A program made the position numbers and the translations under genes. DNA of 64,000 bases from Leidyana gryllorum EB-2025a (Eukaryota > Protista > Apicomplexa): NCBI GenBank assembly GCA_048772705.1, contig JBLWGC010000136.1, forward strand, positions 1-64,000, in the 5' to 3' direction. Positions 12,024 to 62,600 of the stretch are shown one piece after another. The notes under the pieces are model-generated. The model was not told the DNA's origin. It made no database searches and saw nothing but the letters and a program-made list of their open reading frames with translations. Within the stretch, counting starts at the first letter, position 1. Every line of letters starts with the position of its first letter.

Positions 12024-14067
12024 CTAGCTCTCCATGCCTACACGCCTGTTGGTAAATCGCAATCCCAGATACCCCATGGCCCTCCAGAAAACTGCCATCA
12101 CCAACATGAGACCAATGTTGAACCATGGACTGCGGGGTTTCTCGACTCCCCAGCAGGTCTCCATCACACCCATATCGCGGTAGAAGTAGGAAATGACAGA
12201 GTTTAGACCATAACGAATATGCGAGATATGGCGGAACAAACCCCAGAATGGCCCAAGAGCGTCTTCTGTGATCATAAATCCGCTCACTAAAGTCAGGATG
12301 GTCAGCCCAAGAGGTGCAATGACACCCAACATCATTGGAGCGTTCACCAGCGAAGCTCCAAAGAAAATCCATCCGGTAGAGGCCCACGTGGCACAAAGTA
12401 AGTTGAAATAGAAGAACCACCACGCGGCAGCTCCGCTTGCTGCAAGAGAGAGCATAAGAGTCACATAGACCACCAAACTTACAGTACTGAACCAACCACC
12501 AAACGATGAAGGTGATCACCATGGGGTCGAGCGCTATAAATAGAAAGTCAGCTATGTGAATTGCAATCGCAAAGGCTCCCATGTGATACATCCCCCCAGC
12601 CACCTCTCTATTTAGTTGGGCCCGCATGAAGGGGAACTGAATATAGTGTCCAATGGCTCCGAAAGACACCGCCATCACGGGGAAAGTGCTTGCGCCCAGG
12701 AAGTTGAAGAAGCTCACACAATCTGTGGAGCTCTGAGGCTTAGCGACGTCGAAGAAAATGCCTCCATTCAGTAAAGCTTGAATTGTGTTTACAATGATCC
12801 TCACGATCGTCGTAGCCGGATCTCTCGATCGGTTCTTCGCACTCCTCCCAGTCAACGCAACCAGAGAGGTGATGAAGCGACCGACTGAATGTGCGACAGT
12901 CTTGACGGGACCGGGTGGAATGGGAGAAGGCGACGTCTCCATCGTTGTCACAACCTCCATTAAAGCTCGCCCTTCTGGGCTTCCCATGAATTTCGCCGGC
13001 ATCTCTCGCAGCTCTTCCTCTGAGGCCACGATCCGGCCTTCCGGCTCAGGATCCTCTGCCATATCCAAGCCCCGTCGGTCGAGCTCTCTCGGACTCCACA
13101 TAGCGTCTTTTGAGTGATCTCGACTGACCCGACCTCTACTCTGCTGGTCATCGGTGAGCTCAGACTTGTCTCCCGATGGTGTCAGCAGGTCTAAGAGGAA
13201 GTCGGCAGCGTTGAAGGTGGGAGGGCACGAAAATCCTATGGACTTAAGATATGCTGATGCCTGATCAGCAGGTCCATGATACACCAGCTCTCCACCGCTC
13301 AATAGACAGAGTCCATCAAACATCTGCCGGAACAATTGATTGGAGTCGAGGTGATTATGGCAGAGACCCACCTGAAAAATCTGTGAGCGGGGTTGGTGAA
13401 TGGTAGCTATCACCGTGCGGCCGGCCTTTGCCAACTGCCGCAAAATCTTAACCACGTCGAAAGCGAGAGATGAGTCAAGCCCACTGGTGGGTTCGTCCAA
13501 GAAGAGCAGTGGCGGATCATCGAGCAGCTCGATAGCGATACTCACTCTTTTCTTCTGTCCGCCCGACACCCCTTTTCGAATATGGTTCCCGATCAATACA
13601 TTCTGACATGCGGTCAAACCCAATGCTTCGATGACTCTCTCGGTACGGCCTTTCACCTCAGCACTGCTGAGAGACGCGCCACCTTTAAGACGAGCTGCAA
13701 AATGTATAGTCTCATAGACAGTCAGATACGGGAGCAAACAGTCTCGTTGCATTACATAACGACTGTACCCCGCAGCTTGTTGAGCATCCATTCTGTTGCC
13801 GTTCAGGTAGAGCTTCCCGTATGGCCTGACACCTCTTCGCAAGTGGGTTATGCCACCTTCGATTGGGTCCATCAGCTTGGGGTTTGTTCTGCCTGCTAGT
13901 ACGTTGAGCATTGTCGTCTTGCCAGAACCCGATGGCCCCATGATGGCGTACAGACTACTTCCAGGAACTGCAAGGTTCACATCTTTCAGAATCCGTTTAG
14001 GCTCAGCCTTTCCACCATTCACAGCAGCATAGCAGTTTACATCTCTGGCGAGTAGAGAAACTGTCAT
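12024..14067 (-). CDS. ABCG (White family) half transporter
   Basis: GPSGSGKTT, VSGGQKKR, LFLDEPTSGLDS and TIHQP, followed by a C-terminal TM domain. The likely ATG is 14067 (MTVSLL); the last exon is in ORF 12024-12476. Confidence 0.95.
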
Positions 14068-14084
14068 GGAGACGAACAAAAAAA

Positions 14085-16010
14085 ATGTGGGTTCACAGCC
14101 TTGTGGCTGCCTTCGGGGTCGTCTGTGCGCTACAGGCAGATGATCAGACGCACATCCATGAGGTGTTTGAGAACCCGCCACTGCCGTCTCATGAGTTCCT
14201 CGTACGACTGGAGAACCCCCGGTCAATAGTGTACTTTGATACACCCCAACGGCGTGACGCTCATACCGGCCTGCTGGAGTACTTGAGAGGTGAGTTGTTG
14301 TTGTATATCCGTCTCTACAGATGATCTTTGCGCAGCCGAGGGACACCACCTTGAAACCGCGGTGGCGAATGACACCTGGAAAGCAGACGGCATCGACACC
14401 ATAATCGTCATTGCCCATGACGTCCCCTCGCGTACGCCTATTTTCAGAAGCTGATACTCTCTTCCATAACAGGAGTTCGGGAACTTGTTGTGAATCACAT
14501 CGACCAACGCTGGCTGCTGCCCGATGCTTACCACCCAAATAAGAGGAGTAGTTTGGGTTTGCCCCCATCGGTCGTGCTGCTGGTCGATCAGGATTGCGCC
14601 GATCCGAAATTGTGTACTACCGAAAAGCCCTCCGCTTCTGCCACTGAGATGAGCAAGTTGACCAATCAGCTGGGCATGTACACTATGCCGCATCGGAGTG
14701 GCGCCCTGGGTACCAAAGACCGCAACCTTGCTGTCGTGGACTCAACTTCAGAACTCGCTTTTCGTGAAGTCTCTCACCCCACCATCGGCACCAGTGAAGG
14801 TGCGGCTTTACTCAAAGAAATTGCGGGCACCAAGGCGGCCTCGGGTCGAGTGCATCTGCTGAATGAAGAAAACAAGCACACCCAATCGCTGATAGCGCCC
14901 TCACTAGCACCGGTGGCTACCCCTGGAAAGATGGCCCCAGTGGATATAAGCAGTGCCACCCCTCTCGCTGGTAAGATCAAAATTCCGATACTCTACCATC
15001 TACTGCCACAGCCCTCGCTGAGAAGCAAAAGCAACTTCGTCCCACATCACGGGCCAGTGTGGTATCCTTGATGACAGGCACTCGATCTCTCGGTCGAGTG
15101 GCGATCGCTACTCTTCCCTACCTGTGTCAAGACGCTGAGGTCCCCAATCGAGTCTGCCAGTTCACAATGGACTGGGCTACTCACCGCCGAGGTACGTCAG
15201 ACTCGAGACTGTATACACTTTCTGCCAGATTTCACTACCTGGGCCAATTTACAGCATTACCGAGTCTCGAGCCCGCGCACATGGGATGAGTTCACTGGCT
15301 CACTCGTCAAGTCTGAGTGGAATATGGCAGATTTGAGCAGCATTGACATGAGTCGCCCATATTTGTACACCATCCGAGATGAGATAATAGTGTCCATAGA
15401 TTTGTACGACATCCGGCGGTCTAGCAGTGGCAAATTCGAGTGGAAACCGCGTCGTGCGTCTCCAATGGTGGAGATGGAGTATGCAATGATGGTGCCATAC
15501 GTCCGGAAACTGATGCTACCGAGTGCCCAACAGGCTCAAGCCTCTCCTTTGCTGAGTGCTTTGCACAAAGTTTACCACAACGACGGGGAACTGGCCAGTG
15601 CACGTGACCTTCTTCCCTTGCGTGTGTGTTCTGCAACGCACTGGGCCCACTTCAAGGTAAGAGTAGCCTATTCTTTGCCGCCACCACCAAATTCGGTTGA
15701 TCAGGCCCCAGTTCAGCATGGCATCTTCAAAGTAGCCTTGAGGAGCATTGCGGGCGACACTCCGCTGGATGTGGAAACTTTGGTGCCACTGCGAACGTAC
15801 AAGCATGACCAAGGTCCCCGGTTTATGGTTGCGGCGTACCCGTACTACGCCACTCTTATCATCGCAAGTGTAGCTTTCGGATTGCTTGGGATTGTGTGGC
15901 CGGCTATGGTCTGGGGTACTAAAGACGCAGAAGAGACGAAAGGAGGTAGTGTGGTTGATAAGGGGGTGAACAAGGCAGTGGAGAGTACCCTCCGATGCCG
16001 GAAAGATTAG
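14085..16010 (+). CDS. WBP1: oligosaccharyltransferase subunit OST48/WBP1 (divergent)
   Basis: N-terminal signal peptide. The C-terminal segments YTIRDEI, APVQHGIFKV and PLRTYKHDQGPRFMVAAYPYYA plus a TM helix match the DDOST/Wbp1 'RFIxxAYPYY' signature. Confidence 0.8.
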
Positions 16011-21281: not shown

Positions 21282-21310
21282 GCTCGAATGCCCAAATTTT
21301 TTCCTCTCCA

Positions 21311-25825: not shown

Positions 25826-26595
25826 TTACGAAAGGAGTTTCTGAGCCTTGAAATGGTTGGTTAAATGCATGACCGAGAGAATCGTCGAAGCCAGTACAAC
25901 TCCCATCTGCATTAGAGAGCACCAGACGACCCGACTTCCCAGGCTTTGGGTAGAACTGTGAATAGTGAACTCCTGGAATAGCAGTACGAACAAAGGGCGA
26001 CGCGCACAATGCACCAACCTGCTCTTCTTTATAGGCATTCTCAGAGTGGAGGGTGCGAACTTTGTTCGCCAGATTTCTGATCAATTGCTCATTGCTCTCC
26101 ATAGTATGTCCCTTAGCCGCAGCCTTTTGGTGCAGTGACAACATGTACCCTCATGGCGCAGCCGCTCACCGCAAAGTTTATCTCCGTGTCGCCTAGATCT
26201 ACCGAGAAGGTCCATTTTACCATGCTCGTACCAAACCACTGCTCTCAACCTTCAGGAAGAGTTGGACAAAGTACGCTCACTTTAGTGGACGGACAGGATA
26301 TGCACGCTGAATGCTGACCGGGTTCGCGAGTTAGATGCGTCAACTTGCCTTCCGACTCATCCTGTGTAACTTCGCGCTTTGCTACTTCACGACTGTGAGG
26401 ATCCACGATCGTTACAGCACAGGTGATGCCGGGGTTGTCTGCCGCCGCATATGTCACAGTAACGGGCAACGCAGCGGGCGTGTTCTCATAGAAACAGCGT
26501 TTCTGGCCCTCAGACACATAGAAGTAAGCTTTCCCCAGTGCCTGGGCCCGTACAGATCCTGCGCACAACAAGAACACTGCAGTGACCAACTTCAT
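25826..26595 (-). CDS. p24/emp24/TMED GOLD-domain cargo receptor
   Basis: Signal peptide, YFYVSEGQKRCFYE, GQHSACISC, a coiled coil, then RVVWCSLMQ TM and HFKAQKLLS* tail. Confidence 0.92.
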
Positions 26596-26625
26596 CACGT
26601 TTCAAATTTTTTACGGTGAGAGGTG
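26596..26625. promoter_or_regulatory. candidate 30-bp bidirectional promoter core containing AAATTTTTT
   Basis: This is the whole spacer between the divergent TMED and CBF5 start codons. Similar A/T tracts occur at most other gene junctions. Confidence 0.5.
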
Positions 26626-28183
26626 ATGACCAGCAAGTCATCCACCTTTGTCATTGCCCCAGAGGCAAATCCGGCTCCAATTGATACCTCGACTTGGCCG
26701 TTGTTGTTGAAGGTAAGGTTGCATCGCTAAGGTATGGATATTTCTATGGCAGAACTATGCAAAACTCAACGTCCGGACCGGCCATTATACTCCCAGCAAC
26801 TGTGGTTGCTCGCCCCTCAATCGCCCTTTGAGCGAGCATCTGGCTACCGGGATCATCAACTTGGACAAGCCGTCCAACCCATCGAGTCACGAGGTTGTAA
26901 GTTGGGTCAAGCGAATCCTCAAGTGTGAAAAAACTGGGCATTCTGGCACCCTTGATCCAAAAGTCACTGGCTGTCTCCTGGTCTGCTTGAACAGAGCTAC
27001 TCGACTCGTCAAGTCGCAACAAAGCGCCGGAAAAGAATACGTTGCCATAGCTAAGTTCCATGCTACTCCCAAGTCGCGAGGCGAGGTGGAGAGGGCTTTG
27101 TCTACCCTCACGGGCGCCCTTTTCCAACGCCCCCCTGTGATCTCGGCCGTGAAGCGCCAACTTCGAGTTCGTACCATCTACGACTCCAAACTCATTGACT
27201 ACGATGCTGAAAAGAATCTGGCCTGTTTCTGGGTGTCCTGCGAGGCTGGTACATACGTTAGAACGCTGTGCGTCCATTTGGGTCTTCTCATTGGCTGTGG
27301 AGCCCATATGGCCGAGTTGCGCCGTGTGCGCACAGGGTGTCTGTCGGAGGTAGGGTTTGGTTCAACACGCATTTGACTAATTCACTCTCTGCAGGAGGAT
27401 CATTTGGCCACAATGTACGATGTGATGGATGCCCAGCACGTATATGAGACCAGCCGTGACGAGCGGTATCTGCGGCGTGTCGTCCTTCCCTATGAGCTCC
27501 TGCTCGTTGGGATGCCTCGGATTGTCGTGAAAGATAGTGCTGTAAATGCCATCACGTATGGAGCGAAGCTTATGATTCCAGGCGTGCTCCGTTACGAGAA
27601 CGGCATTGACATCAACACAGAAGTGGTTCTCATGACTACAAAGGGGGAAGCGATAGCCATTGGTATAGCTCAGATGACCACAGCTACCATAGCCTCGGTT
27701 GATCACGGCACTGTCGCAGTGATCAAGCGCAACCTGCTTGAGAGAGACACTTACGACATGCGTTGGGGCTATGGGCCACGGGCAAAGGAGAAGAAGGAGC
27801 TCATCCTCAAGGGTCTTTTGGATAAGAACGGGAAGCCGAACGCCAACACGCCGATCACATGGTTGAACGTAAGCACTCCGATCATCCCTTGTTGGTATAC
27901 ATAGTCGCAGGCTGAGGGTATTTTGCCCCGTCTTTGCGGCGGGACGGATGACGTAGCGACCACCAAGTTGGAGTCAGATGTCAAGGTGGAGGTTGTTACA
28001 AAAGAGGAAGAGAAAGCAGACAGCAGCAGTGATGACGAGGATAAGGTAAAGTTTGCATATTGTAGCTTGACGTCATCAAAAACGTTATTGCAGTCAAAGA
28101 AGAAGAAAGATAAGAAGAAGCGGAAACAGCGGGACGGCGCTGAGTCCTCCAAAGATTCAAAGAAGAAGAGAAAGAAAGATTAG
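26626..28183 (+). CDS. CBF5: H/ACA pseudouridine synthase dyskerin
   Basis: [50 protein letters not shown], a PUA domain and a Lys-rich tail. Confidence 0.98.
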
Positions 28184-34879: not shown

Positions 34880-34939
34880 GACACGACACTAAATTTTTTT
34901 ATCGTGATTGAGATTGTCGACTTGATGACATCTCCCACT

Positions 34940-41553: not shown

Positions 41554-41588
41554 AACCTTCTTTCCAAAAAAAGCTTTGCTACTCTACC

Positions 41589-41791
41589 TCACCGGGCCAA
41601 CTCGGCCCATAAGCTGGGGGTCGAAGACTCTAGACTGACATTTTCTTTTCGATCCGCGGCCGTAGCACTATCTGTAGATACACTCACGATACCCAATGAC
41701 CTCCGCAAGAGGATAATTAGGAACGTCACAGCGGATGCACCCAGTAGGAATATCAAAACGGAGCTCAAGACATACTGATACTCTGGTCGCA
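41589..41791 (-). CDS. small single-TM hypothetical protein
   Basis: MRPEYQYVLSSVLIFLLGASAVTFLIILLRR. The start is uncertain (41791 or 41831); the longer track ORF would overlap POP5. Confidence 0.5.
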
Positions 41792-41855
41792 TAGACGTCC
41801 AGCCCACCTCTATCCTCCGGACGTGCCCCATCAGTGTGTAAAAAACTGTCCAAAA

Positions 41856-42506
41856 ATGGTTCGTATCAAGCATCGGTGGGTGACGGTCCAGTTGCGTACT
41901 CAGCATGACACAAAACTCGATAGTCTCCTCACAAACACAGCCGAGACACGTAACCTGAAATCCGTCGGGTCAACTCTGCAAGCCCGTGAGAGATTGTTAA
42001 GTCAAATAACTGAGTCCGCGCTGAGCTCGGTGAGTAGAAAAGTTTACACCTCTATGCTACACAAGTATCAATGCAGGCTGTGAGAGACACAATGGAGCAT
42101 ACTTTTGGCCTCGTAGGTCTCGGGTCGCTGCTTCAGAACTATGCGAGTGAGCGATCGTTAATGTTTCTCATGTGATCCCCACCATAGTTTCCTATTGGAA
42201 TCCCAAAATCGGTATTGCGATGGTGAAAATACTCTACGACCATAACACAATGGTTCGAGCTGCTCTCGTGTTCCTTTCCAATATCAATGATATTCCCATT
42301 CAGCCGCACGTGATTTGTGATTGCGGTAAGTACCTGACTTTTACCCATTAGCAACTCTGGGCCGCTCAGCCACCCTCGTCCAGGCGAAGCGGTTCCTACT
42401 CAACCACTTGCATCAGTGGTTGAGCGTTTATGCTCCATGTATGAAGACCGAGATGCTTCAGGGCTACCAAAAGAATGAAGAGACGTCGATCATGAATTGT
42501 ACATGA
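41856..42506 (+). CDS. POP5: RNase P/MRP subunit POP5 (Rpp14/Pop5 family), 4 exons
   Basis: Spliced translation MVRIKHRWVTVQ...AVRDTMEHTFGLVGLG...SYWNPKIGIAMVK...VRAALVFLSNI...CATLVQAKR matches the Pop5 pattern. Confidence 0.85.
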
Positions 42507-44421: not shown

Positions 44422-47400
44422 CTAACGCTTCCGCCCATAATGACGAGGTGCCATGGTACCTCGCCCCCCCCTTGATGAGGCACACAGTGCCAGTCTAGAT
44501 CTAACATTGCTCGCTCCGGGATAGTTTCGAAGGTTAGACGGTGCCTCCGTGGGTGTGAACTCATCAGGGCATGCGCCATGATGTTCGGCAAACTCGTCAA
44601 GACTAGTCATCCCAAACGGAGGTACTGGCAAGAGAGCGCGGCGGGGAATGATAATGCCGCGCATCTCGGGGGTCCTGCCTCCCAAATCGCTCGCGCCTTG
44701 GTGAATAGAAATGAAACTGCGTCAAACCAAATCATGTCTCACCTATGCAACTCTTCTCTAACAACACTTCGGCCAAGTCGTCGAGCCCTGGCTCTCTGGG
44801 TGGGTCGTCACGCAGCACGTGGTTTGGGCCCCAGTACAGTCCGATGACCACACCGAAGGTGCCTGGTGGGATGGGACTCCCAAACTTGATTGTCACAACT
44901 CTCTGGCCCAGCTTTAGGTGACATGCATTGCGCGATTGAACTACACAGACTTCATGTGTACCAGCGTACGGGATTCCACTTACCGGGATTGAACAGACCT
45001 CGAATGACGTTCTGGTGTCCCGCGACCAGAACAGGGAGCGGAATGACGGCATTGGTGGCGGTTTCGTGCTCCTCAATCATCCGGGCCAGCTTGATGACAC
45101 CCTCTTGAGAGAGAAACTCGGATCGCTTCCCAATGGAACCGAGTCTGTAGAACGGTTGGGCCCGTAGCCACCCAAGATAGGTTTGGAGACACCAAATGGG
45201 GAGCTCGTTCTCGGTATCCTCAGCCGAGCTTGGCAGAATCGCTGCCAAGGGCAGAGGTTTGTGTTGACTCTGGAGAAGAAAATACCAATGCTAATCAACA
45301 CGACGATCTCAATGCTCACCACGGCGTCTTGCATAGCCTTCTTCAAGTTGGGGAGGTAGAAGAAAACTTGCTCAATCAGCCCCAACACCTTCGGAGAGAA
45401 GGAATACTCTGTGTGTGTCCGTCGAGAACTCAACGAAACCACAGAGTACCCGGGCACCCCCATTGAGGCATCCTGCCCTGTTGCCACATTTCTTGTTTCC
45501 CGTATGAGGTTCAGCCCAATGTCCACCGCATTATAAGACTTGGGTACCTTCACCAGTACCCTTCGCAGCAACCATTTGACCATCACTGTGCTCATCTGTG
45601 TGGCCTCTGCAATCTTGACAACACTCAGCCATCGACTTCGATCTGACGACTCGTTGGTATGCAGTGGATGAGGTTTCGGCACTCTCGCTCGATCATCGGT
45701 GGCCAGTAACTCATATTTCGCCTGAATGTTCCAGCGAGTCTCCAGAGACTCCGTTCGCAGGAATGTAGAAATCACCCCGCCCTCTGCGAACTGAGGCGAG
45801 AATTGAAGAAAATAACCAGAACAGAACACTTACTGTCTGCGAGACGTCCCCGAGCACACCAAATACAGTGCACTGCGCAGTACACAGCACTTTCTCGTGT
45901 TTAGAAAGGGTGTTGGCCAAAGTGTTGCCAGTCGGTACCATGTCGGACAAGGCTCTCTCTGTCAAACCAATCTTTCGGTCGATCAGCCGAATTTGCGGCC
46001 AGAAGCACAATTTGCTCTCCGTTGTTCTAACTCGGGCAACTCTGTTCGATTATGATGAGTGATAAACGAGTGTTGAGTCTTACGGTTTGCCTGCGAGATT
46101 CTCTGCAATCTCTTCCAACTCCAACACCTCAAACATAATTCGTTTCCAGTTAAAGTCTTTGAAAGAGGTATTCCGTCCTATCGACGCATTCTTCTTATCC
46201 GTCTCCTGATGACTGATGTAGCGAGACTGTAGTCGCGCCAGCGTGTCGTGAAGCGAACGGAGAGCCTTAGCCTCCTCAGCTTCCAGAGAAACGGTCTCTT
46301 CCGGGAAGTACAGACCAGATCGGCACAGCACCTCGAATCGTCTGCTGGCAATGGAATCAAAGAATTGAGTTATCTTCGAGTTGGAACTCTTGAGGGCAAC
46401 ACTGTTCCGCAGCGGGATACGATCGGGACCGTTGGACTGTTGTGGTCCAGAGAACTCTGCGAGGTCGTCCAGAGGTATCAAAGGACAGGTAATGTGGAGG
46501 GCATGTTGAGTCAGCGGGATATAACCGAGCTCAGCAGTCCAAATACCAATCAATTGTCCAACAGTCCTTAGGGGGAAATCGTACTCCACCGTGGGACACT
46601 CAAGATATTGTGTGCTCGTTCCCATACGCTGAGCAAGCGGGGAGAGAGAATTCTCGAGTTCTTTGAAGATATGGGCCAAACTCGCAAACGTGCTGGAATG
46701 TGGCTTCAGAGACATGATGAGACTGGTATTTCGAGTCAGTCGATTGAAGATTTTCACACGGTTCTTCAGCCTCTCCACATTTAGAATCCTGCAAGCGTCG
46801 CCACTCAAGGCACCCGGAGTGACATTGAGAACCTTTTGGCACTCGTAGAAACTTGGCTGATAGTGTGTTTTGGCGTAACCTGCCAGAAGTGCCGATCTAT
46901 GAGGGCCTCGTTGGAGTTGGGCGAAAGCGAACTCTACAGGCAGCTTGTAACCGATCAGTGAGGCCCCAAAGATCGCAGGAAGATCTTTTAGGGGGGAGCC
47001 GATGAACTTTGTGTCAATCCTTGCAGTCTTCGAGTTGAGGATTCCAGCTTTTCGCAGGACACAAGTTGCAAGTCTGGAAGTCTCAGCCATAGTCTCTCCC
47101 GTGGACGAGTGCGAGTCGGCGGACATGTAGAGGAACACGTTTCCGATACGATTGCGGGCCAGCTCGGCTGGGGCCAACTGCTGCTTTTGGAGCTGACCGG
47201 TCATAGCATCAATTAGGCGTCGCTCGTCAATGAACGGCAACAGGGCCACCCCGCCCCATGGTACATTGGTGCCCTCCAAGTCAACCGGAAAGTGCTCTGG
47301 GTAGTAATCGATGATCGGAGAGCTCGGCTCGAGCATAAGTGGCCGCAGTGCTTGGGGTAAAAGTTCCGCCGAGAGCGGCGGCAAAACAGCCATCAACTGT

Positions 47401-49443
47401 TGGTGGGGTTCAAACGGGTCGCCTAAATCGAACTTGGGACGCCACGAGGGACTGCACAGGAGAGAGTAGACGCTGGCACGAGTGGGCACTTACTTTGCGA
47501 CCAGAAAGTGGAAGAGATCCTTCGTAAAAGGCGCGTAGTGGAAGGGAAAATACCACGACCAGCTTGGAACACCAGCAAAGTAATACGTCATGCACTGCGA
47601 CCATCGATGTGGACACGCTTGCTTGTGAGTGAGACCTTACCCATTGTACACCCTCCAAGTAAGACTCGAGCAGTTTATTGAGCTCTTGTCGCCCTCCACT
47701 GTCCTTTCCGACTTGGATGTCGAAGTGCATCTTGCGCCAATAATGAAAAGCTCTGTGGTCATTGATCGATTCAAGGGTGTGTCCGAGTCGGAGCCAGCCC
47801 TCTTCTGTAAAAGTGTTATCTTGGTCCCTATCATCGATGCCTTCCAATGGCCCATCCCCAACGGCATTCGACGGGGGTCTGAATTCCATCGGGGTCAGCC
47901 TTTGTTTCCCAGACAGCCACTTCTTATCAGATACCTTCTCTCCAAAAAGGCCCTCCTCATGCTCAGCGCAACGGCCCAGGAAGAGACGAAACGGTACCCA
48001 GGCAATCTGCCCACCCTCGCCGAGAAGATAAGGACTTTGGGTTTCCTTTACTTGCGCGTATACCCATTCCTGCGGGAGAGACGTGTAGCACCACAAAAAT
48101 ACTCCTTTCCTTACTGCTAAATAGGTTGTATAGATATCCAGTAGAGTTTCGATCCCTCCTTTGGAGATGTCGGCAAAAGGGAGGTGGGGCAGGAAGTCAT
48201 TGCCAGCAAGAGAGCAGATGAGCAAAAAGTCGTCCAATACGCGCTCCGGCTCGAACCGAAAACCGAAATTCCCAATAAACGTCTCATCCGAGATCATATG
48301 GTCCCATGATTTCTTGAATAGCAGCGACGACGAGCCGGAGCTGCTCTTCAGTGGCTGACCATTGCTCTTCAACTGCCGCATGTACTCCGCGTCATCGGCT
48401 GCCAAACCCGTATTTCTGGGTTTCTTCTTCAACTTCTTGGTGTTTGACTGTTGTTGGCTGTCGGTCAGTGGCCCATTTTTAGCCATCAGTCCCTCCAGTA
48501 TATCAATAACTAGATATTCTCTTAACACGGGCAGATGAAGGAGCTGAAAGTTTGCGGTCGCAGATATTATCCGCCGCTGGTCGGCTGCCCAGCGAGGCTC
48601 TCCGTCCAGTCTGACTTCTTCTCTCAGCAAAGTGAAATGGGGTTCGTGGGTCATTAGTGACAACATGATCAAATCGGCGTCGAGGCCTTGCAAACAATGG
48701 GAGAGGTTGGGGGGATAGTCAGGCTGGGAACGGAGGGCTCTGATGAATTCCATGATTTTATGCTCCCCCTCGCCAGGTACATCGGGACCACTCAAAATCA
48801 CCTCCAGATCATGCCAGCTCGCGTTGTGCGACATCTGGTGGGCAATCATGAACTGCAAATGGTCCATGAGCTGTTCCATGAATTCCGTGCCCGGGGTAAT
48901 GCAGTTGGAGTCGAAGGGTGTCTCATGGCCTTTCGTGGTCGGCGGGCACACGAAGAGCTCCGGGGATACTGACTCTCGCAGCTGAGCATCCTTCTTGTGC
49001 GACTCGTGTCTCTCACGTGCCGATCGGAAACGTCGCGAACGCTGCTGGTTCATCTTCGCCCGAGGAGCTACGCCATCCACTCCGATGAAGAGCAGCCTTT
49101 TTGGCTTGGCTATTTGAACCAAATTATCTATGTATCTCATGACATTAACCCAGACCTCGCTGAAGCTCTGCTTGATATCAAGTCGGCCACCATCACTATT
49201 AGCGTGGGTCGCATTGTGGATAACACCGTTCAAGTCCAGATACAAGCAATCCACTGGGAAACTGGAAGCGCTTCTGTCCTGAAGACTCCCAAGTTCGGCC
49301 CGAACTTCCGGGCAGCTTGCCTCGTACAGTCGGGCAAAGTCGTGGCCTGAGGTGTTACCACTAGCCGCCAGACTCGTGCATAGCTTCTGGTTGATTCTCG
49401 GATATCGCTCAGACAACCATCGATAGAAACGTGGTACTCCCAT
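44422..49443 (-). CDS. XRN1: 5'-3' exoribonuclease 1
   Basis: [67 protein letters not shown] and QQLMAVLP. The long C-terminus with an SH3-like GTFGVVIG segment indicates XRN1 rather than XRN2. Confidence 0.95.
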
Positions 49444-49457
49444 TTTTTGGGTAGAGT

Positions 49458-49887
49458 ATGAGCAAAGATAGCGTACAATCCCTCTTTGCGATCATAGCTG
49501 ATTCGTTGGATGAACTCATTGGTGTGAAAGACAAACCGGAGCGCTTGCTGAGGATCACCAACGTGGTAATCGCTGTGCTCCTGACCAGCACCATACCGGT
49601 GTTCACATGGCTTCCCACCGGAGAACTACAGACTGAAGATGATCATCTACACTACTCCCTGTGGCCTAAGGCACTGGTGCACAACGCCACTGTCTTAGCC
49701 AAGTCGCGTTCGGCTGTACGCGGGCTCTTGATGGGCTTTGTGTTCCTGCTTCTAATCTTACTCTTCCTCCTGAATATGTAAGTGGCGTTCTCTCTGTCTG
49801 TCACGGCTCTTCCTTAGGGTTGGCACAGCGGCAATCCGTCAGTATCATTTGGACAAGGCGGCTAGAAAAGAGGAGAAATCAGAGTGA
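49458..49887 (+). CDS. small two-TM membrane protein, possibly Pkr1-like
   Basis: Two hydrophobic segments. An intron (GTAAGT...CCTTAG) leads to a charged tail ending ...KEEKSE*. The family guess is from topology only. Confidence 0.6.
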
Positions 49888-55427: not shown

Positions 55428-55483
55428 GGTGTAATCTTCTTCTAACACGAAGACAGAAAGGCGCCACTATCACCAAAAACTGC

Positions 55484-56207
55484 TTATCGGGCTGCTGCTG
55501 TTGATCTCCATGACTCCAGGTTGTGAGTGATTAAAGCGCGGACCACCTTCTGATCTCTGACTCCGTCTGGCTCAGGGCACTCTCTCAGAGCAGAATCGAG
55601 CATACCCATAGCTCTTGACGCATCCTTTTGTAACTCATATACAAAGATGGCCCGGTTGAGGATCGTGGCCAGACGGAGGGCATGACCTGCAGGAAGTCTC
55701 CTGGACGCTTCCTCGGCCGCATGGAAGGCACGGTCAGCCTCGGCCATCTTACTCGTGTCGACTTCGGCCATATATCTGCAGAAGGTTCATTAAAGTAGCA
55801 ACTTGAGGCCTAAGATCAGCTCACCTCAGGAAATCTGCTTTCTGTTTTGCACACCAGGCGTGTTGATCGTCACGGTGCGCTTTCTTGGCAACCTGGTCCA
55901 ACATGTCCAGACCTCCTTGACATAAAGCTGTCACTCGGGTAGCCAGTGTACGCCGATATTCCTTAATTTCTAGCGTAGCAGTATATTGTCCCGCCTTCCG
56001 CTCCTCTACTTGGCCCAGTAGCCTCCATCCTGTCCGGTACTTGCCAACACATTTTCGATACGCTTCTGAGAAAATTCCCCGTTCTTGTGGTGTCAGATCT
56101 CCCCCGCGAGCGACCAGTGCATTGGCGCAATCGACCATATCGTCATACCGCTCGGCTTTCTCAGCAATGATCGATTGCAGCAGTGGGTCTGTGATGTCGA
56201 TGGGCAT
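55484..56207 (-). CDS. divergent 14-3-3 family protein (2 exons)
   Basis: AEKAERYDDMV, LTPQERGIFSEAYRK, KADFLR/YMAE, HALRLATILN..IFVYE and HNLESW. Confidence 0.88.
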
Positions 56208-56243
56208 GTTGGTGGAAAAAATTAAGGGCTCCCACCGCCTTAA

Positions 56244-57986: not shown

Positions 57987-59573
57987 CTAATATTCAACAG
58001 CTAGGAAACCATCTCTGAGGTCTCGATTCAACTCCTCGTATTCCACCACTGAGACTGGCTCCATGCCCCGAACGTGTAGCTTTTGATTGAAAATATGAAA
58101 CTCTGACTTGTAATGTGTACGGATACTCGAGCATTTCAGCTCTTTCAGGTAGTCCAAGTTACACACTGGGCACCATGTCTGGCTATCGGACGGCGGAGGA
58201 CGCGCAATCTGCTGTTCTGTGGTACCCCCTTCCACACCTTGCGGCACCTCCGCTTCCTCTGCCTCCTTCCGCTGCTTGCTGAGTTTCTCCGCAGCCTTCC
58301 GCTCAGCATCACGTTCCGCCCGCTCGATAGCTTTCAGCTTCCGACGCCTCTCCCGAGTGTTTTCTTCTTCCAGATCAATCTTTGCATCTTTACTCTTTCG
58401 GCCCTTCCGGCTCTTGGTGCCACCCTCAGACTTCGTCTTGGTATCTTCCGATCCCGCTGCTGCAGCTGGAGGGCCTGTGTTTCCGTCAGTCTGCTTGGCA
58501 GCCGCCGCCGTCTCCTTGTCTTCTTCGCCAGCGCTTTTCTCGTCGCCCTCCTCCTCCTCAGCGGATTCGTCCTCTGATTCAGAAGAAGAGTTGTCTCCTA
58601 CGAGTAGAGCAAATCCTGACTGTGCACCTCTACCCCCGATCTGCTGCAGGACTTCTCGACTCTCGCTCTCATCATCATCGTCTTCCTCCTCTTCTTCCTC
58701 CTCCTCCTCCACATCTTCCTCCTCAACGTCAGATTGCTCCTCATCCTGATCACCTTTTACATTCTTGTTCTCCACTTGTCGTCTGACTCGCCGGAGAGCC
58801 ATATCGGCCGCCGCTTCCGGGGTTCCCTCGTCGTACATGTTAATCACAGTGATGGCCAACTTGCCGTTCTTAGAACTCACAAGCCGCTCCTGAATACTCC
58901 AATCTGAGGGGAGCGCCCGATAAGTGAACAACACACGCGAGCCTCCGGCTAAAAGTATGCTAGACAGGATTTCCGCTTCCAGCACTGTTCTGAGGAAGTC
59001 TTCAACTTCTTCCTCAAATTCCTCAGGCACCTCCATTTGAGCTCGCATCAGAGCCAAATAAACCTGATCACTCAACTTCAAAGCCAGCCGCTGAGCCACC
59101 TTGGCCGCAGCGGCCTTGGCACTTGCGCCTTGTGTGTATTTGGGGCGATATCGTATTTGCTTCAGACATGTGTCCACCACATCCGGTGTAAGCTTGAACC
59201 CAGTCGCACGGCTGATCAACCGCTGACCCGCTATCGTGCATACTTCCTTATGGAACTCCGCCGCTTGAACCTTCCTCTCTTTTCCACTGACTTGAACAGT
59301 GCCCTTCTGCAGGATGACTCGAGTAATTTCATTGATATCTGTTGTACCAAAGTCCCGTCTTAAGTCTTCTTCGGGGGCGAAGCGGCCCTTCACCACGCTG
59401 GTGAAGATGTGGTCCGATTGTAGCACCTCCGATACATCACTTTCGAGCCCGCTTCGCCAGTCTTGAACCTTGTTGGGGTAACATGCTATTTCAAATCGAG
59501 CCCCTCCGCGACGCAGCCGCACTACTGCCACATTGGTGAGCCTTACTTGGGTAACTGGTTGCGTGATGACCAT
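57987..59573 (-). CDS. SBDS: ribosome maturation factor SBDS/Sdo1 with a C-terminal zinc finger
   Basis: QVRLTNVAVVRLRRGGARFEIACYPNKV...VLQSDHIFTSVVKG, an acidic linker and CPVC...HYKSEFHIFNQK. Confidence 0.95.
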   Translation of the reverse strand: MVITQPVTQVRLTNVAVVRLRRGGARFEIACYPNKVQDWRSGLESDVSEVLQSDHIFTSVVKGRFAPEEDLRRDFGTTDINEITRVILQKGTVQVSGKERKVQAAEFHKEVCTIAGQRLISRATGFKLTPDVVDTCLKQIRYRPKYTQGASAKAAAAKVAQRLALKLSDQVYLALMRAQMEVPEEFEEEVEDFLRTVLEAEILSSILLAGGSRVLFTYRALPSDWSIQERLVSSKNGKLAITVINMYDEGTPEAAADMALRRVRRQVENKNVKGDQDEEQSDVEEEDVEEEEEEEEEDDDDESESREVLQQIGGRGAQSGFALLVGDNSSSESEDESAEEEEGDEKSAGEEDKETAAAAKQTDGNTGPPAAAAGSEDTKTKSEGGTKSRKGRKSKDAKIDLEEENTRERRRKLKAIERAERDAERKAAEKLSKQRKEAEEAEVPQGVEGGTTEQQIARPPPSDSQTWCPVCNLDYLKELKCSSIRTHYKSEFHIFNQKLHVRGMEPVSVVEYEELNRDLRDGFLAVEY

Positions 59574-59601
59574 AGCGTCTTTTGATTTTTTCTGGAGGAG
59601 G

Positions 59602-62600
59602 ATGGATGTTCAAAGTCTACAGCAGTTGGAATCACTCTGCAGCAAGTTCTATTCGTCAGATGCGGCTGAGCAGAGCTTAGCACACCGCACACTCCTACCA
59701 CTAGTCTCTCAGCCACAATATGTGCCACAATTCCAAGCTGTGCTAGCTCATTCGCACGACACGCAAGCAATATTGTTTGCAGCGAATGCCCTCCATAAGC
59801 TTTTCACGAGGTATGTGCCTGACTTCTGAGCCTCTACGTGTTGTCAGTGAATGGAACTCTTGTCCAGAGGCATGCAAGAACGACACTCGCTCCTTCCTCC
59901 TATCGTACCTGGTGAGCGGCACACCCATCAACAGTTGGCCTATCCAACCCCACAATGCAGTTCAACAACGGCCCGAGCTTCCTTCCGAATAATGTACCCA
60001 CCCTCAACGCTTTGATTCGCCTGCTCGTTCGAATCGTGAAGCTGCAATGGTTGGAGAAACCCGCTTACCAAAATATCTGCGACCAAGTGTCGTCATTTCT
60101 AGCAGCGTCAACTCGCGAATGGGTGGTCGGCATCTCCATATACTGCGAGCTCACCGCAGATATGGCTCCAGTTCTGGGTGGTGGCCTTGCACGAGCACGA
60201 CGAACTGCTTTTGCCTTTCGCGACACGGCGCTTCCACAGATCTTCACCACCGCTGTGGAGACCCTCCAGCAAATCAATGCCGGAGCGATAACCATTGCCA
60301 ACGCCGACGAAGAAACGCAGTTATTGCGGACAGTGCTCGGACTGGCTCTGCAGTCTCTGAGTTTCGATTTTATGGGAACTTTACCTGATGAAACCAACGA
60401 TGAGCGCTCGGTAAGGAACATTCCATCGTTGCATATCGTTTGTGTCTTGCGTTTGGCAACTGGGTCACTTCGTCGCGTAGCATCACGGTACGATGATTAT
60501 ACGGCTTGGAGGCGGTGATGCAGCTACTTGGTCGGCGACGGGCTCTCGTACTCTGTGGTGAGGCTGCAGGTGACACTTTCGCCCGCGAAGTGCAACGTTC
60601 TGATTGTCCTGAGAGTGTGATTTTGATCGCGTAAATGTGCTTTGTGGTCTTTCGCGCCTAATGTATAAGGTTCATACCTTGTTGTCAATCACAGGATCCG
60701 GTGATGATTCCTTCGAGTTGGACAGTGGTGAAAGAAGCAAATCTGCCGGCTCTGTTCTTCGAGATATACAAGAAATGCTGCACACCGGTCAATGGCACCC
60801 GGGCACCAGCGCAGATGGAATGCGCAAGATACTGCTTACACTGCCTTGTCCAAGTGGCTTCTCTCCGGCGCTCATATTTCACCAAGGAAGAGGAACGGAA
60901 CGCACATCTCTCTGAATTGGTGAATCGAACAGTCATGATCTTGGATGACAGAATTGGGATTGATGCTGATGAAGGTTGTTACCATCAATTTTGTCGACTA
61001 CTCGGAAAAATCAATGCAAGCGTACCCATCTATGACTTAAAAGCGAGCTTGCAGAGTCGGAAGGGCACGCCGAGTGCTAGCGCTGCTCCGGGAGAACCCA
61101 GGACTATGTAAGTTGTCTAAATAGAACTCTCAATATCACGTCAGAGAAGATTATCCGGGACAGTCATAGTGATGGGAGCGAGCTCTAGTGATCCTCGAGA
61201 GTGGGGCCCTCGCGATGCTTTCATGCTATCCTGGTTGTCAAAGGTTTGCCAGTTCACCTTGGAGTCTCTGAGCAGATGGACGTTCCAGCCCAACTCGAAG
61301 CACTATCTCTTAGGTGAGTCCGATCCTCGGCTTAAACGTCCCATGATGCGGCAGGCTTTTGGAGCTCACTGGTCAATCCGTTTTTGAGTCGAAACTCACG
61401 ACTGCCTCCAGAGATAGGTCAGCATGTACACGTCGTGTTTCAGGCCTTCGTGGACAGTTGCTTGAAGATCGGCGAAGCTTCTGCTCTGATGGAGAGTAAC
61501 CTCACACAGTCCCAGTTGCAGTTGGCAGAACCAAGTCTCCTCTTCAAGCTTGAGGAAGTACGCGACGCTTCCGAACTTGAAGATCCTTTGGAGCACGAAG
61601 TCTTCCGAGCCGAGCAACTCGAGGTCATCCAATCCTTAGGTCGTGTCCACTATGTACAGTGCGCACAGTATGTGATGCGGCATTGGCAGAATGCGTGGAA
61701 TGCGGCCGAGAGGAAGTCTTTGCCCGTGGAGGTGGTTGAGCGGCGTTTGACGTGGCTCATCTACATCGTCGGAGCCTTGATTGCCGGCCAAAATCATACA
61801 CGCAACATTTTCAATCTCCGGATACCAAGTAATGTAACAAGTTTCATCGGGAGATCTCATGGCGGTCTAGGAATGGATTCCGAATCGACCATGGGGGGTG
61901 AAGACGATGACAAACGGACGGGAACAGGGGGTGATTCGGCTGGACCCGAAGACGCCACACGGGCAGTCTCGTCAAGTGTCTTCAAGCTTATGATCCTCAC
62001 AACCACTCAAGGCTCTGAATACTCTCCAGTGAGCACCCACAGCCCTTCCTCGATTGTAAACTCCCCATCCATTATCAGACCGACGCTCAAAGCAAGGAAT
62101 ATAGAGAGCTGGCCTACCTCTTCTTCCTTGAGGCGTTTAGAAAGCTCCACTTCTCCGACATCGCCCAACCTCAGTCTGAGGTAGAAGAGCGAGCGCGACA
62201 GTACAGTGCGGCCATTGGAACCAACGAGGATGTCATGTCCATCACCCTCCAGAAGATCTTGATGAACTTGCAGACTTGTGGGCAATACGAAGTTGTCATC
62301 CGGAAGTCCCTCCAACTATTCAAGGATTTGTCCTCATCTGTTATGATGGTGGGGCCTTCTACCAGCCCTGCGCACATCGTCACGGGTAAGTTTATTATAT
62401 CCTCGAATTGTTCGTCCCCTTCCTGCGCCCTCCTTCCCCACCCCTACGCTCCTAAAGCAACACTGGACTCCCTGATCTCAGCTGTGTGTCATCTCGACTC
62501 TGATCGTCGTTTGGCCATCACTGAGGACTTGATTGCCGCCCGCATGCAGGCTGTAGACGGTGCCATTAAATATGGCCGATCTATAAGACGTGTGTTGCTC

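What the first reader, a model, noticed from the sequence alone, without database searches (positions are those of the whole stretch)
49441..49460. Head-to-head genes with only 14-30 bp between start codons
Seen: spacers between divergent ATGs are 14 bp for XRN1/membrane protein (49443/49458), 17 bp for ABCG/WBP1 (14067/14085), 28 bp for SBDS/XPO7 (59573/59602) and 30 bp for TMED/CBF5 (26595/26626). XRN1, SBDS and XPO7 have conserved N-termini and TMED has a signal peptide, so those starts are well constrained. Established: one Pol II preinitiation complex covers more DNA than this. Inference: the genes have nearly leaderless mRNAs from a minimal shared promoter, or 5' UTRs overlapping antisense into the partner CDS, or 5' ends supplied by processing such as trans-splicing.
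Basis: partly seen in the sequence, partly recalled or inferred. Interest (0 to 1): 0.8.

Follow-up and report, generated by a model that had tools for sequence, protein, structure and literature searches.

The report
Tiny A/T-tract spacers between divergent genes
In this very compact gregarine-like (apicomplexan) genome, many back-to-back gene pairs really do have start codons only 14-30 bases apart around a short run of A's or T's, which is most likely a minimal two-way promoter like those of Giardia and microsporidia; no RNA data were available to show where the transcripts begin.

Summary
Observation confirmed. All four spacers are exactly as described (14, 17, 28 and 30 nt). The start codons are well constrained for XRN1, SBDS, TMED, CBF5 and the small membrane protein. 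They are less well constrained for XPO7, WBP1 and ABCG.

Every spacer holds an A/T run of at least 6 bases. So do three further pairs on other contigs (36-44 nt) and one unverified pair in the window (24 nt). Such a run is expected in about 1% of stretches of that length.

Genome-wide, CAT-tract-ATG occurs 1,250 times, against 578 for the swapped-orientation control and 317 for the reversed control.

The XRN1/membrane-protein pair is head-to-head in two other species, with spacers of 23 nt (T8 run) and 102 nt (T5).

Best reading (about 0.5): the dA:dT tract is a shared core promoter/initiator that gives very short leaders, as in Giardia and microsporidia. Unlike Giardia, this genome encodes canonical TBP and TFIIB.

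Rival (about 0.3): 5' UTRs that overlap into the partner gene, as reported for Cryptosporidium. An RNA-derived contig from a relative spans the orthologous spacer.

Trans-splicing is unlikely. Three of the eight sense-strand spacers contain no AG, and no dinoflagellate-type spliced leader was found.

No RNA run was listed for this organism, so the transcription start sites remain unmeasured.

The scan had already found the same phenomenon on other pieces of this genome.

The parts
49441..49443 (-). XRN1 start codon (CDS first exon 47410-49443)
   Evidence: XRN_N profile positions 1-241 match from residue 1. Orthologues in L036 and L037 align M1 to M1 at 58-59% identity.
49443..49448 (.). T6 run (A6 on the XRN1 sense strand) that abuts the XRN1 start codon. 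It lies inside the 14-nt spacer 49444-49457.
   Evidence: The orthologous spacers hold a T8 run (L036) and a T5 run (L037).
49458..49781 (+). Small two-transmembrane protein (107 aa). An in-frame TAG lies at 49452-49454.
   Evidence: No Pfam match and no word-search hit. Exhaustive HMMER found 5 relatives, best E = 2e-19. The conserved core starts at residue 8.
14065..14087 (.). ABCG (-, start codon 14065-67) / WBP1-OST48 (+, ATG 14085): 17-nt spacer with an A8 run at 14078-14085.
   Evidence: CATG at 14065-68 creates an out-of-frame ATG at 14066, 19 nt upstream of the WBP1 start.
26593..26628 (.). TMED/p24 (-, start codon 26593-95) / CBF5-dyskerin (+, ATG 26626): 30-nt spacer with a T6 run at 26607-26612. 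On the TMED sense strand it reads AAAAAATTT. Both genes have an in-frame stop inside the spacer (26602-04 and 26617-19).
59571..59604 (.). SBDS (-, start codon 59571-73) / exportin-7 (+, ATG 59602): 28-nt spacer with a T6 run at 59586-59591 and a T4 run at 59579-82. An alternative in-frame XPO7 ATG lies at 59566-68 and overlaps the SBDS start (ATGACCAT).
41829..41858 (.). Candidate fifth pair: an 80-codon ORF (-, start at 41831) and a 75-codon ORF (+, ATG 41856), with a 24-nt spacer and an A6 run at 41840-41845.
   Evidence: Neither ORF has a Pfam, PDB or Atlas match, so the pair is unverified.

Best explanation
Each ultra-short spacer is a minimal two-way core promoter built around one short dA:dT tract (5-8 bp; sometimes an A-run followed by TTT).

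Inferred mechanism. Pol II initiates at or within a few bases of the tract, in either direction. Mature leaders would then be about 0-30 nt, and at most about 6-8 nt for XRN1 and WBP1, whose A-run touches the ATG. The pre-initiation complex of one gene necessarily sits on the first codons of its partner, so one DNA copy can fire only one of the two genes at a time. Translation would have to start at a cap-proximal AUG. Longer read-through or overlapping RNAs probably coexist with these short-leader mRNAs, as in microsporidia.

Shown: the spacers, the start codons, the tract, its genome-wide enrichment, and its conservation with the gene pair.

Inferred: that the tract is the initiator, and that the leaders are short.
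For: 1. An A/T run of at least 6 bases is in all four spacers, in one further candidate pair in the window, and in three pairs on other contigs. Those three are proteasome-alpha/SET (44 nt), RRP40/proteasome-alpha (36 nt) and ORF/proteasome-alpha (40 nt), with N-termini fixed by the Proteasome_A_N signature. The chance per spacer is 0.4-1.4%.

2. Genome-wide, CAT-N(0-26)-T6-N(0-26)-ATG occurs 1,250 times, against 578 for the same trinucleotides in swapped order and 317 for the reversed pattern. The version with spacers of 30 nt or less occurs 458 times against 61. In the 205-kb sample the counts are 33 against 7 and 6.

3. Runs of at least 6 bases mark gene starts in general. 42% have an ATG opening at least 60 codons within 40 nt, against 22% of random sites and 26% of mixed A/T hexamers. 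For runs of at least 7 bases the figure is 60%.

4. The XRN1/membrane pair is head-to-head in two other species. The tract is on the same strand next to the XRN1 start, with 23-nt (T8) and 102-nt (T5) spacers. Protein identity is only 44-59%.

5. The tract cannot be a -30 TATA box for XRN1 or WBP1. It abuts their ATGs, and the XRN1 N-terminus is conserved from residue 1.

6. Upstream ATGs sit close to several starts: at -19 (WBP1, out of frame), -36 (XPO7), -46 (TMED) and -52 (XRN1). There is no depletion of sense ATGs upstream of the tract at 42 tract-linked starts. Both fit leaders that do not reach beyond the tract.

7. Precedents exist. In Giardia an AT-rich initiator spans the transcription start site, leaders can be as short as 1 nt, and two-way initiation can occur at the same nucleotide (PMC1885649, PMC3792122). 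E. cuniculi has an AAATTT-like signal and 5' UTRs under 7 nt (PMC2803860). Here the motif A5+TTT occurs 10 times in 205 kb, and 8 of these have an ORF of at least 50 codons within 45 nt downstream. Read in the opposite orientation, only 1 of 10 does.
Against: No transcript 5' end has been measured: no RNA run was listed for this organism.

The closest well-studied lineage, Cryptosporidium parvum, shows extensive UTR overlap regardless of strand (bioRxiv 10.1101/2025.01.17.633476).

A Logan contig assembled from a locust RNA-seq run (SRR5171258; PMC7643970) runs without a break from the XRN1 coding region across the 102-nt spacer into the membrane gene. This suggests that RNAs cross the spacer in that relative.

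The distance from the tract to the ATG is not fixed (-1 to 26 nt in pairs, up to about 45 nt at single genes).

An A-run just before an ATG could partly be translation-initiation context.

Apicomplexan leaders tolerate upstream ATGs, so the upstream-ATG argument is weak.

Giardia lacks a clear TFIIB, whereas this genome has TBP and TFIIB, so the analogy is functional only.
Confidence: 0.5

Rival explanations
1. Overlapping divergent 5' UTRs. Each gene starts transcription tens to hundreds of bases upstream, inside the partner's coding sequence, so the two mRNAs are antisense to each other at their 5' ends. The tract would be only a nucleosome-excluding or TBP-attracting centre of the shared region.
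For: C. parvum shows extensive UTR overlap between genes whatever their strand (bioRxiv 10.1101/2025.01.17.633476).

The RNA-derived contig L037 spans the XRN1 5' coding region, the spacer and the membrane gene in a relative.

In EukProt single-cell eugregarine transcriptomes, the SBDS hits sit on contigs up to 20.6 kb long that carry several ORFs (labels p4, p6).

Head-to-tail gaps of only 35-56 nt in the window (for example before 56207 and 41553) force some transcript overlap anyway.
Against: This model does not explain why a homopolymer run is obligatory inside every spacer and conserved there.

WBP1 would carry an out-of-frame upstream ATG overlapping its start. XPO7 would gain 12 non-conserved N-terminal residues.

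There is no depletion of sense ATGs upstream of the tract.

Contigs cannot show where RNAs start or how abundant they are. The spanning RNA may be minor read-through.
Confidence: 0.3
2. 5' ends made by processing. Long primary transcripts are trans-spliced to a spliced leader, or carry a 5'-UTR intron, so the genomic spacing says nothing about the mature leader.
For: Some spacers look acceptor-like on the sense strand of the + gene (T-run followed by AG: TTTTTTGGGTAG, TTTTTTCTGGAG). The related alveolates perkinsids and dinoflagellates trans-splice (background knowledge).
Against: The sense-strand spacers of XRN1 (ACTCTACCCAAAAA), ABCG (TTTTTTTGTTCGTCTCC) and TMED contain no AG (sequence).

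The tract occurs in either orientation relative to the gene.

No match to the dinoflagellate-type spliced leader was found in the 15.5-Mb assembly with up to 3 mismatches.

Spliced-leader trans-splicing is not known in apicomplexans (background knowledge).

An earlier follow-up in this scan found the AG no more frequent than chance (s1-592185, not re-tested here).
Confidence: 0.05
3. Artefact of start-codon choice. The true starts lie downstream or in unseen upstream exons, or one partner of each pair is not a gene.
For: The ABCG frame is open 167 codons upstream, and its homology starts only at about residue 20. The WBP1 first exon has no detectable homology. XPO7 has a second in-frame ATG.
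Against: Five starts are pinned by homology from the first residues and/or by in-frame stops 6-9 nt upstream. The focal pair is conserved with the same start positions in two other species. No downstream ATG precedes the conserved cores of XRN1, SBDS or the membrane protein.
Confidence: 0.05

Closest known systems
Giardia lamblia AT-rich initiator / bidirectional core promoters (PMC1885649, PMC3792122)
   Same: A short A/T-rich element lies within about 0-25 nt of the start codon. Divergent neighbours share one element. The inferred leaders are very short (in Giardia most are under 20 nt, and some are 1 nt). The element works in either orientation.
   Different: Start sites are measured in Giardia and not here. 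Giardia has almost no introns, a highly divergent TBP and no clear TFIIB. This genome is intron-rich and encodes TBP and TFIIB. The element here is typically a pure homopolymer run in a genome of about 52% GC.
Microsporidian (Encephalitozoon cuniculi) AAATTT-like and CCC-like signals with 5' UTRs under 7 nt (PMC2803860)
   Same: An A-run followed by TTT lies 10-30 nt upstream of the ATG and is orientation-specific (8 of 10 sites against 1 of 10). XRN1 reads CCCAAAAAATG. In microsporidia, short-leader monocistronic RNAs coexist with long overlapping RNAs from both strands. That mixed picture would reconcile the evidence here.
   Different: Microsporidia are an unrelated lineage (fungal relatives), so any similarity would be convergent. 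The CCC-like motif was not tested systematically here. The 5' ends are unmeasured.
Cryptosporidium parvum compact transcription units with overlapping UTRs and polycistrons (bioRxiv 10.1101/2025.01.17.633476)
   Same: It is the nearest well-studied lineage to gregarines. Its genome is very compact, and transcripts overlap their neighbours on either strand.
   Different: The passages I read in that preprint do not mention start codons 14-30 nt apart around a homopolymer tract. C. parvum is AT-rich (30% GC), so such a tract would not stand out.
Yeast/mammalian bidirectional promoters (nucleosome-depleted region with poly(dA:dT); background knowledge)
   Same: The gene pairs are divergent, and dA:dT tracts act as orientation-independent promoter elements.
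   Different: In yeast and mammals the two start sites lie roughly 100-200 bp apart at the edges of a nucleosome-free region. Here the two start codons themselves are 14-30 bp apart, which is less than one pre-initiation-complex footprint.

Membership tests
Giardia-type AT-rich initiator promoter | An A/T-rich element lies within about 25 nt upstream of the start codon | tested here: met
   The tract lies -1 to 26 nt from the ATG in 8 of 8 pairs.
Giardia-type AT-rich initiator promoter | The transcription start site maps inside the element, and the 5' UTR is mostly under 20 nt | not testable with these tools
   No RNA run was listed, so read laying could not be used.
Giardia-type AT-rich initiator promoter | The same element drives transcription in both directions | tested here: inconclusive
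   Only the shared position between two conserved genes and the genome-wide enrichment of the divergent arrangement bear on this. There is no expression data.
Giardia-type AT-rich initiator promoter | Reduced general machinery (no clear TFIIB, divergent TBP) | tested here: not met
   TBP repeats are on C169 and TFIIB cyclin repeats on C159, all above the Pfam cut-offs.
Microsporidian AAATTT/CCC start signals | An AAATTT-like signal upstream of the ATG, oriented towards the gene | tested here: met
   A5+TTT occurs at 10 sites in 205 kb. Eight have an ORF of at least 50 codons within 45 nt downstream. In the opposite orientation only 1 of 10 does. The sample is small.
Microsporidian AAATTT/CCC start signals | [quoted passage not shown] | not tested
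   It was seen at XRN1 (CCCAAAAAATG) but was not surveyed.
Overlapping-UTR architecture (Cryptosporidium-like) | RNA molecules that continue from one gene's 5' end into the partner's coding sequence | tested here: inconclusive
   The RNA-derived contig L037 of a relative spans the spacer and both genes. There is nothing for this species, and contigs do not show RNA ends or abundance.
Spliced-leader trans-splicing | An AG acceptor lies between the primary-transcript start and every ATG | tested here: not met
   There is no AG in the sense-strand spacers of XRN1, ABCG and TMED. An acceptor would have to lie inside the partner's coding sequence.
Spliced-leader trans-splicing | Spliced-leader RNA genes in the genome | tested here: inconclusive
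   The dinoflagellate/perkinsid-type leader is absent with up to 3 mismatches.

The most novel reading that the evidence does not exclude
A single 5-8 bp dA:dT tract is a complete, symmetric Pol II core promoter in an intron-rich apicomplexan with canonical TBP and TFIIB. It fires back-to-back transcripts whose 5' ends lie a few bases apart, so hundreds of genes make capped mRNAs with leaders of 0-15 nt. That would imply a non-scanning, cap-proximal mode of start-codon selection. It would have evolved independently of Giardia and microsporidia, and it has been conserved with gene order across eugregarine species.
Probability: 0.35. Interest if true: 0.75.

Novelty: new variant of a known kind. 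Interest (0 to 1): 0.58.

Why it matters
If the tract is the promoter, this genome shows how small a eukaryotic Pol II promoter can be while the standard machinery (TBP, TFIIB) is kept. Two essential genes would share less DNA than one pre-initiation complex covers.

It would be a third, independent origin of the minimal A/T initiator with near-leaderless mRNA, after diplomonads and microsporidia, and in a lineage that still has many introns.

In practice, the tract plus the first ATG is a usable start-site signal for annotating gregarine genomes, where gene models are poor.

The conserved XRN1/membrane-protein pair, with spacers of 14, 23 and 102 nt in three species, is a natural series for testing how spacer shrinkage affects start-site choice.

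Tried and rejected
1. RNA evidence. The look-up of sequencing runs listed no RNA run, so read laying could not be used.

2. Genome-wide sampling. Three family searches (Pkinase, Helicase_C, Ras) returned coordinates only.

3. ORF-only histogram of divergent first-ATG pairs. It showed no peak. Random ORFs of at least 50 codons are too common at 52% GC, many first exons are short, and several true starts are not the first ATG of their open frame. I rejected the method, not the phenomenon.

4. A codon-usage classifier separated sense from antisense too weakly to build gene models.

5. Synteny test for SBDS/XPO7. The only relative with DNA (L034/L035, RNA-derived) has at least 357 nt of non-coding sequence upstream of SBDS and no XPO7.

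6. XRN1 relative P0001 (L014): there is no divergent start within 130 nt.

7. Exact look-up of window proteins: none is in the collection.

8. POP5 identity for the ORF at 41856, recalled from memory, was not supported by Pfam, PDB or Atlas.

9. Asymmetry in tract-to-ATG distance between the T-run and A-run sides is suggestive in the 8 pairs, but it is not borne out by the genome-wide match list. I make no claim about it.

10. The joined (spliced) protein models of XPO7, CBF5 and WBP1 were not searched.
Full report
WHAT IS THERE

The window is part of contig C136 of a 15.5-Mb, 237-contig assembly. It has about 52% GC and many short introns.

The organism is a eugregarine-like apicomplexan. The best hits of its SBDS protein are EukProt transcriptomes of Gregarina spp., Blabericola migrator and Protomagalhaensia, at 44-52% identity. 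Coccidia come next, and they share the same C2H2 zinc-finger extension. None of the window's proteins is present in the 15-billion-protein collection, so no close relative is available.

THE FOUR SPACERS

- CATTTTTTGGGTAGAGTATG, 14 nt, at 49441-49460.
- CATGGAGACGAACAAAAAAAATG, 17 nt, at 14065-14087.
- CATCACGTTTCAAATTTTTTACGGTGAGAGGTGATG, 30 nt, at 26593-26628.
- CATAGCGTCTTTTGATTTTTTCTGGAGGAGGATG, 28 nt, at 59571-59604.

ARE THE START CODONS RIGHT?

XRN1: the Pfam XRN_N profile is matched from its position 1 at residue 1.

SBDS: residue 3 aligns with residue 3 of human SBDS.

CBF5: residues 6-29 align with residues 4-27 of yeast Cbf5. An in-frame TGA lies 9 nt upstream.

TMED: it has a signal peptide, the EMP24/GOLD domain starts at residue 24, and an in-frame stop lies 6 nt upstream.

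The small membrane protein next to XRN1 was the weakest partner. It has no Pfam family and no hit in the word-based search. The exhaustive HMMER search found five relatives, the best at E = 2e-19 and 1e-17. The conserved core begins at residue 8. An in-frame TAG lies two codons before the ATG, and there is no other ATG before the core. Both starts of the focal pair are therefore fixed.

Three starts are less secure:
- XPO7 exon 1 has importin-beta N-terminal features (Atlas score 0.97, 26 of 30 hits in IBN_N clusters). A second in-frame ATG lies 12 codons upstream at 59566 and overlaps the SBDS start.
- WBP1 rests on a signal-peptide-like N-terminus. Only a later exon carries the OST48 middle domain.
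- ABCG homology begins at about residue 20, and the frame stays open for 167 codons antisense to WBP1. No alternative ATG lies downstream before the Walker A region.

THE COMMON ELEMENT

Every spacer contains a homopolymer run of A or T at least 6 bases long, counting the T of CAT or the A of ATG where the run abuts the start codon. Only 73 such runs occur in the 205 kb I could read. A random stretch of 16-46 nt holds one in 0.4-1.4% of cases.

In the window, 13 of 25 runs lie within 40 nt upstream of an ATG that opens a long frame. Over all the sampled DNA, 42% of runs of at least 6 bases have such an ATG opening at least 60 codons. For runs of at least 7 bases it is 60%. The figure is 22% for random sites and 26% for mixed A/T hexamers.

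The run occurs in either orientation relative to the gene.

A sub-motif, an A-run of at least 5 followed by TTT, is directional. Eight of ten sites have a gene start downstream, against one of ten when read from the other strand. This resembles the AAATTT-like signal of microsporidia (PMC2803860).

IS IT GENERAL?

The proteasome loci were fetched without regard to the motif. They gave three more pairs whose alpha-subunit starts are fixed by the Proteasome_A_N signature at residues 4-9:
- proteasome-alpha / SET-domain protein: 44 nt, T6 (L018).
- RRP40 / proteasome-alpha: 36 nt, T7 (L033).
- a 58-aa ORF / proteasome-alpha: 40 nt, A8 (L030).

The window has a further unverified candidate at 41831/41856 (24 nt, A6). 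So four, and probably five, of roughly eight divergent junctions in the window are this short.

Across the whole assembly, the pattern CAT-N(0-26)-TTTTTT-N(0-26)-ATG and its complement occur 1,250 times. The same trinucleotides in swapped order occur 578 times, and the reversed pattern 317 times. With each gap limited to 12 nt, which allows spacers of up to 30 nt, the counts are 458 against 61. CAT and ATG are each about 1.4-1.5 times commoner than GTA and TAC. A satellite unit, CATGTTTAACACTTTTTTGCCACATG, inflates both the test and the swapped-order counts. The swapped-order control is therefore the fairest. It still leaves an excess of several hundred sites.

COMPARATIVE EVIDENCE FOR THE FOCAL PAIR

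Two relatives of the membrane protein lie on Logan contigs that also carry the 5' end of XRN1 on the opposite strand, so the head-to-head pair is conserved.

In L036 (ERR10900127) the CAT is at 322-324 and the ATG at 348-350. The spacer is 23 nt, GGTAATTTTTTTTAACAAGGAAT, with a T8 run.

In L037 (SRR5171258) the CAT is at 507-509 and the ATG at 612. The spacer is 102 nt and contains TTTTTCTTTGGGG.

The XRN1 N-termini align M1 to M1 at 58-59% identity. The membrane proteins are 44-48% identical.

At this divergence the gene order, the orientation and a T-rich run on the same strand near the XRN1 start have all been kept, while the spacer length ranges from 14 to 102 nt.

A fourth XRN1 relative (L014) has no divergent start within 130 nt.

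HOW IT MOST LIKELY WORKS

The tract abuts the ATG of XRN1 and of WBP1, and the XRN1 N-terminus is conserved from residue 1. The tract therefore cannot be a TATA box placed 25-30 nt before their start sites. It has to act at or next to the start site, or else initiation lies upstream of it.

The reading I prefer (about 0.5) is that the tract is a shared, orientation-independent initiator/core promoter that gives leaders of about 0-30 nt. Giardia is the precedent: its AT-rich consensus spans the start site, leaders can be as short as 1 nt, and two-way initiation can occur at the same nucleotide between adjacent genes (PMC1885649, PMC3792122). E. cuniculi is another, with 5' UTRs under 7 nt (PMC2803860).

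Weak supporting points:
- WBP1 would carry an out-of-frame upstream ATG if its leader exceeded 19 nt.
- XPO7 would gain 12 non-conserved residues if its leader exceeded 36 nt.
- Sense ATGs are not depleted upstream of the tract at 42 tract-linked starts.

Unlike Giardia, this genome encodes TBP and TFIIB. The arrangement is therefore run by standard machinery, whose footprint must cover the partner's first codons.

THE MAIN RIVAL

The main rival (about 0.3) is overlapping 5' UTRs.

C. parvum, the nearest well-studied lineage, shows extensive UTR overlap on either strand (bioRxiv 10.1101/2025.01.17.633476).

SRR5171257 and SRR5171258 are transcriptome runs from locusts (PMC7643970). L037 is therefore an RNA-derived contig, and it runs unbroken from the XRN1 coding sequence across the spacer into the membrane gene. 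Some RNA must cross the spacer in that species. A contig cannot show where RNAs start or how abundant they are.

The EukProt gregarine SBDS hits also come from transcriptome contigs up to 20 kb long that carry several ORFs.

Both pictures may hold at once, as in E. cuniculi, where short-leader monocistronic RNAs and long overlapping RNAs coexist (PMC2803860).

OTHER ALTERNATIVES

Trans-splicing is unlikely. The sense-strand spacers of XRN1, ABCG and TMED hold no AG. The tract occurs in both orientations.

KNOWN OR NEW?

The Porospora gigantea genome paper reports 84% coding sequence and 28-nt introns. It does not contain the words "intergenic", "UTR" or "bidirectional", and its one use of "promoter" is in the reference list (PMC9250747). 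My literature searches found no description of this architecture in gregarines.

Within this scan, the same phenomenon had already been noted and followed up on other pieces of this genome (s1-592207, s1-592185, s1-592192). I treated those notes as leads only. My own tests agree with them. They add the conserved XRN1/membrane pair, the genome-wide controls, the presence of TBP and TFIIB, and the RNA-derived contig that keeps the overlap model alive.

LIMITS

No RNA run was listed for this organism. Only about 205 kb of the genome could be read. Gene models are my own rough ones. Spliced protein models were not joined; exons were searched separately by reference.

Noticed in passing
window 41829-41858: Candidate fifth ultra-short pair. 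An 80-codon ORF with a transmembrane segment (-, start 41831) faces a 75-codon ORF that begins MVRIKHRW (+, 41856). They are 24 nt apart around an A6 run. Neither ORF has any family match.
   Followed up: partly
window 59566-59573: ATGACCAT: an in-frame upstream ATG for XPO7 (12 extra codons) overlaps the SBDS start codon on the other strand. Which XPO7 ATG is used depends on where transcription starts.
   Followed up: partly
window 14068-14568 (-): The ABCG reading frame stays open for 167 codons upstream of the accepted start, antisense to the first WBP1 exons. No family match. Probably non-coding.
   Followed up: partly
window 26604-26612, 34891-34900, about 38370, 21294-21302; L021: An A-run followed by TTT (AAAAAATTT) lies 10-30 nt upstream of the ATG and points at the gene in 8 of 10 cases. 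It resembles the microsporidian AAATTT-like signal.
   Followed up: partly
window 56208-56246, 41554-41591, 55428-55486: Head-to-tail gaps of only 35-56 nt between one gene's stop codon and the next gene's ATG, each with an A/T run inside. The 3' end of the upstream mRNA must overlap the next gene's promoter or coding sequence.
   Followed up: no
G000 contigs C23, C25, C26, C31, C37, C38, C41 (coordinates): A tandemly repeated unit containing CATGTTTAACACTTTTTTGCCACATG recurs at spacings of roughly 130-280 nt. It looks like a satellite, and it inflates the genome-wide pattern counts.
   Followed up: no
G000 C3:5257-5286, C5:38344-38374 and 45807-45836, C13:20968-20998, C20:1579-1604: A multi-copy head-to-head ORF pair (MRWGLHNGRLAQ... 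/ MTTLSTVLSG...) with a 19-20 nt spacer around a T6-7 run, present on several small contigs. Possibly a subtelomeric or repeat family.
   Followed up: no
window 49458-49781; P0241, P0242, P0244, P0245: The small two-transmembrane protein belongs to a family with only five detectable relatives among 1.84 billion representative proteins. It has no Pfam family, and its function is unknown.
   Followed up: partly
(EukProt names): In single-cell eugregarine transcriptomes, SBDS sits on contigs of 3.8-20.6 kb that carry several ORFs (labels p2-p6). This hints at pervasive overlap of neighbouring transcripts, or at genomic DNA carry-over.
   Followed up: no
L034 1-357 and 1945-5998: An RNA-derived contig with an SBDS orthologue has at least 357 nt of non-coding sequence before the ATG and 4 kb of AT-rich (30-35% GC) sequence with few ORFs after the gene. 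It may be chimeric, or from a less compact species.
   Followed up: no
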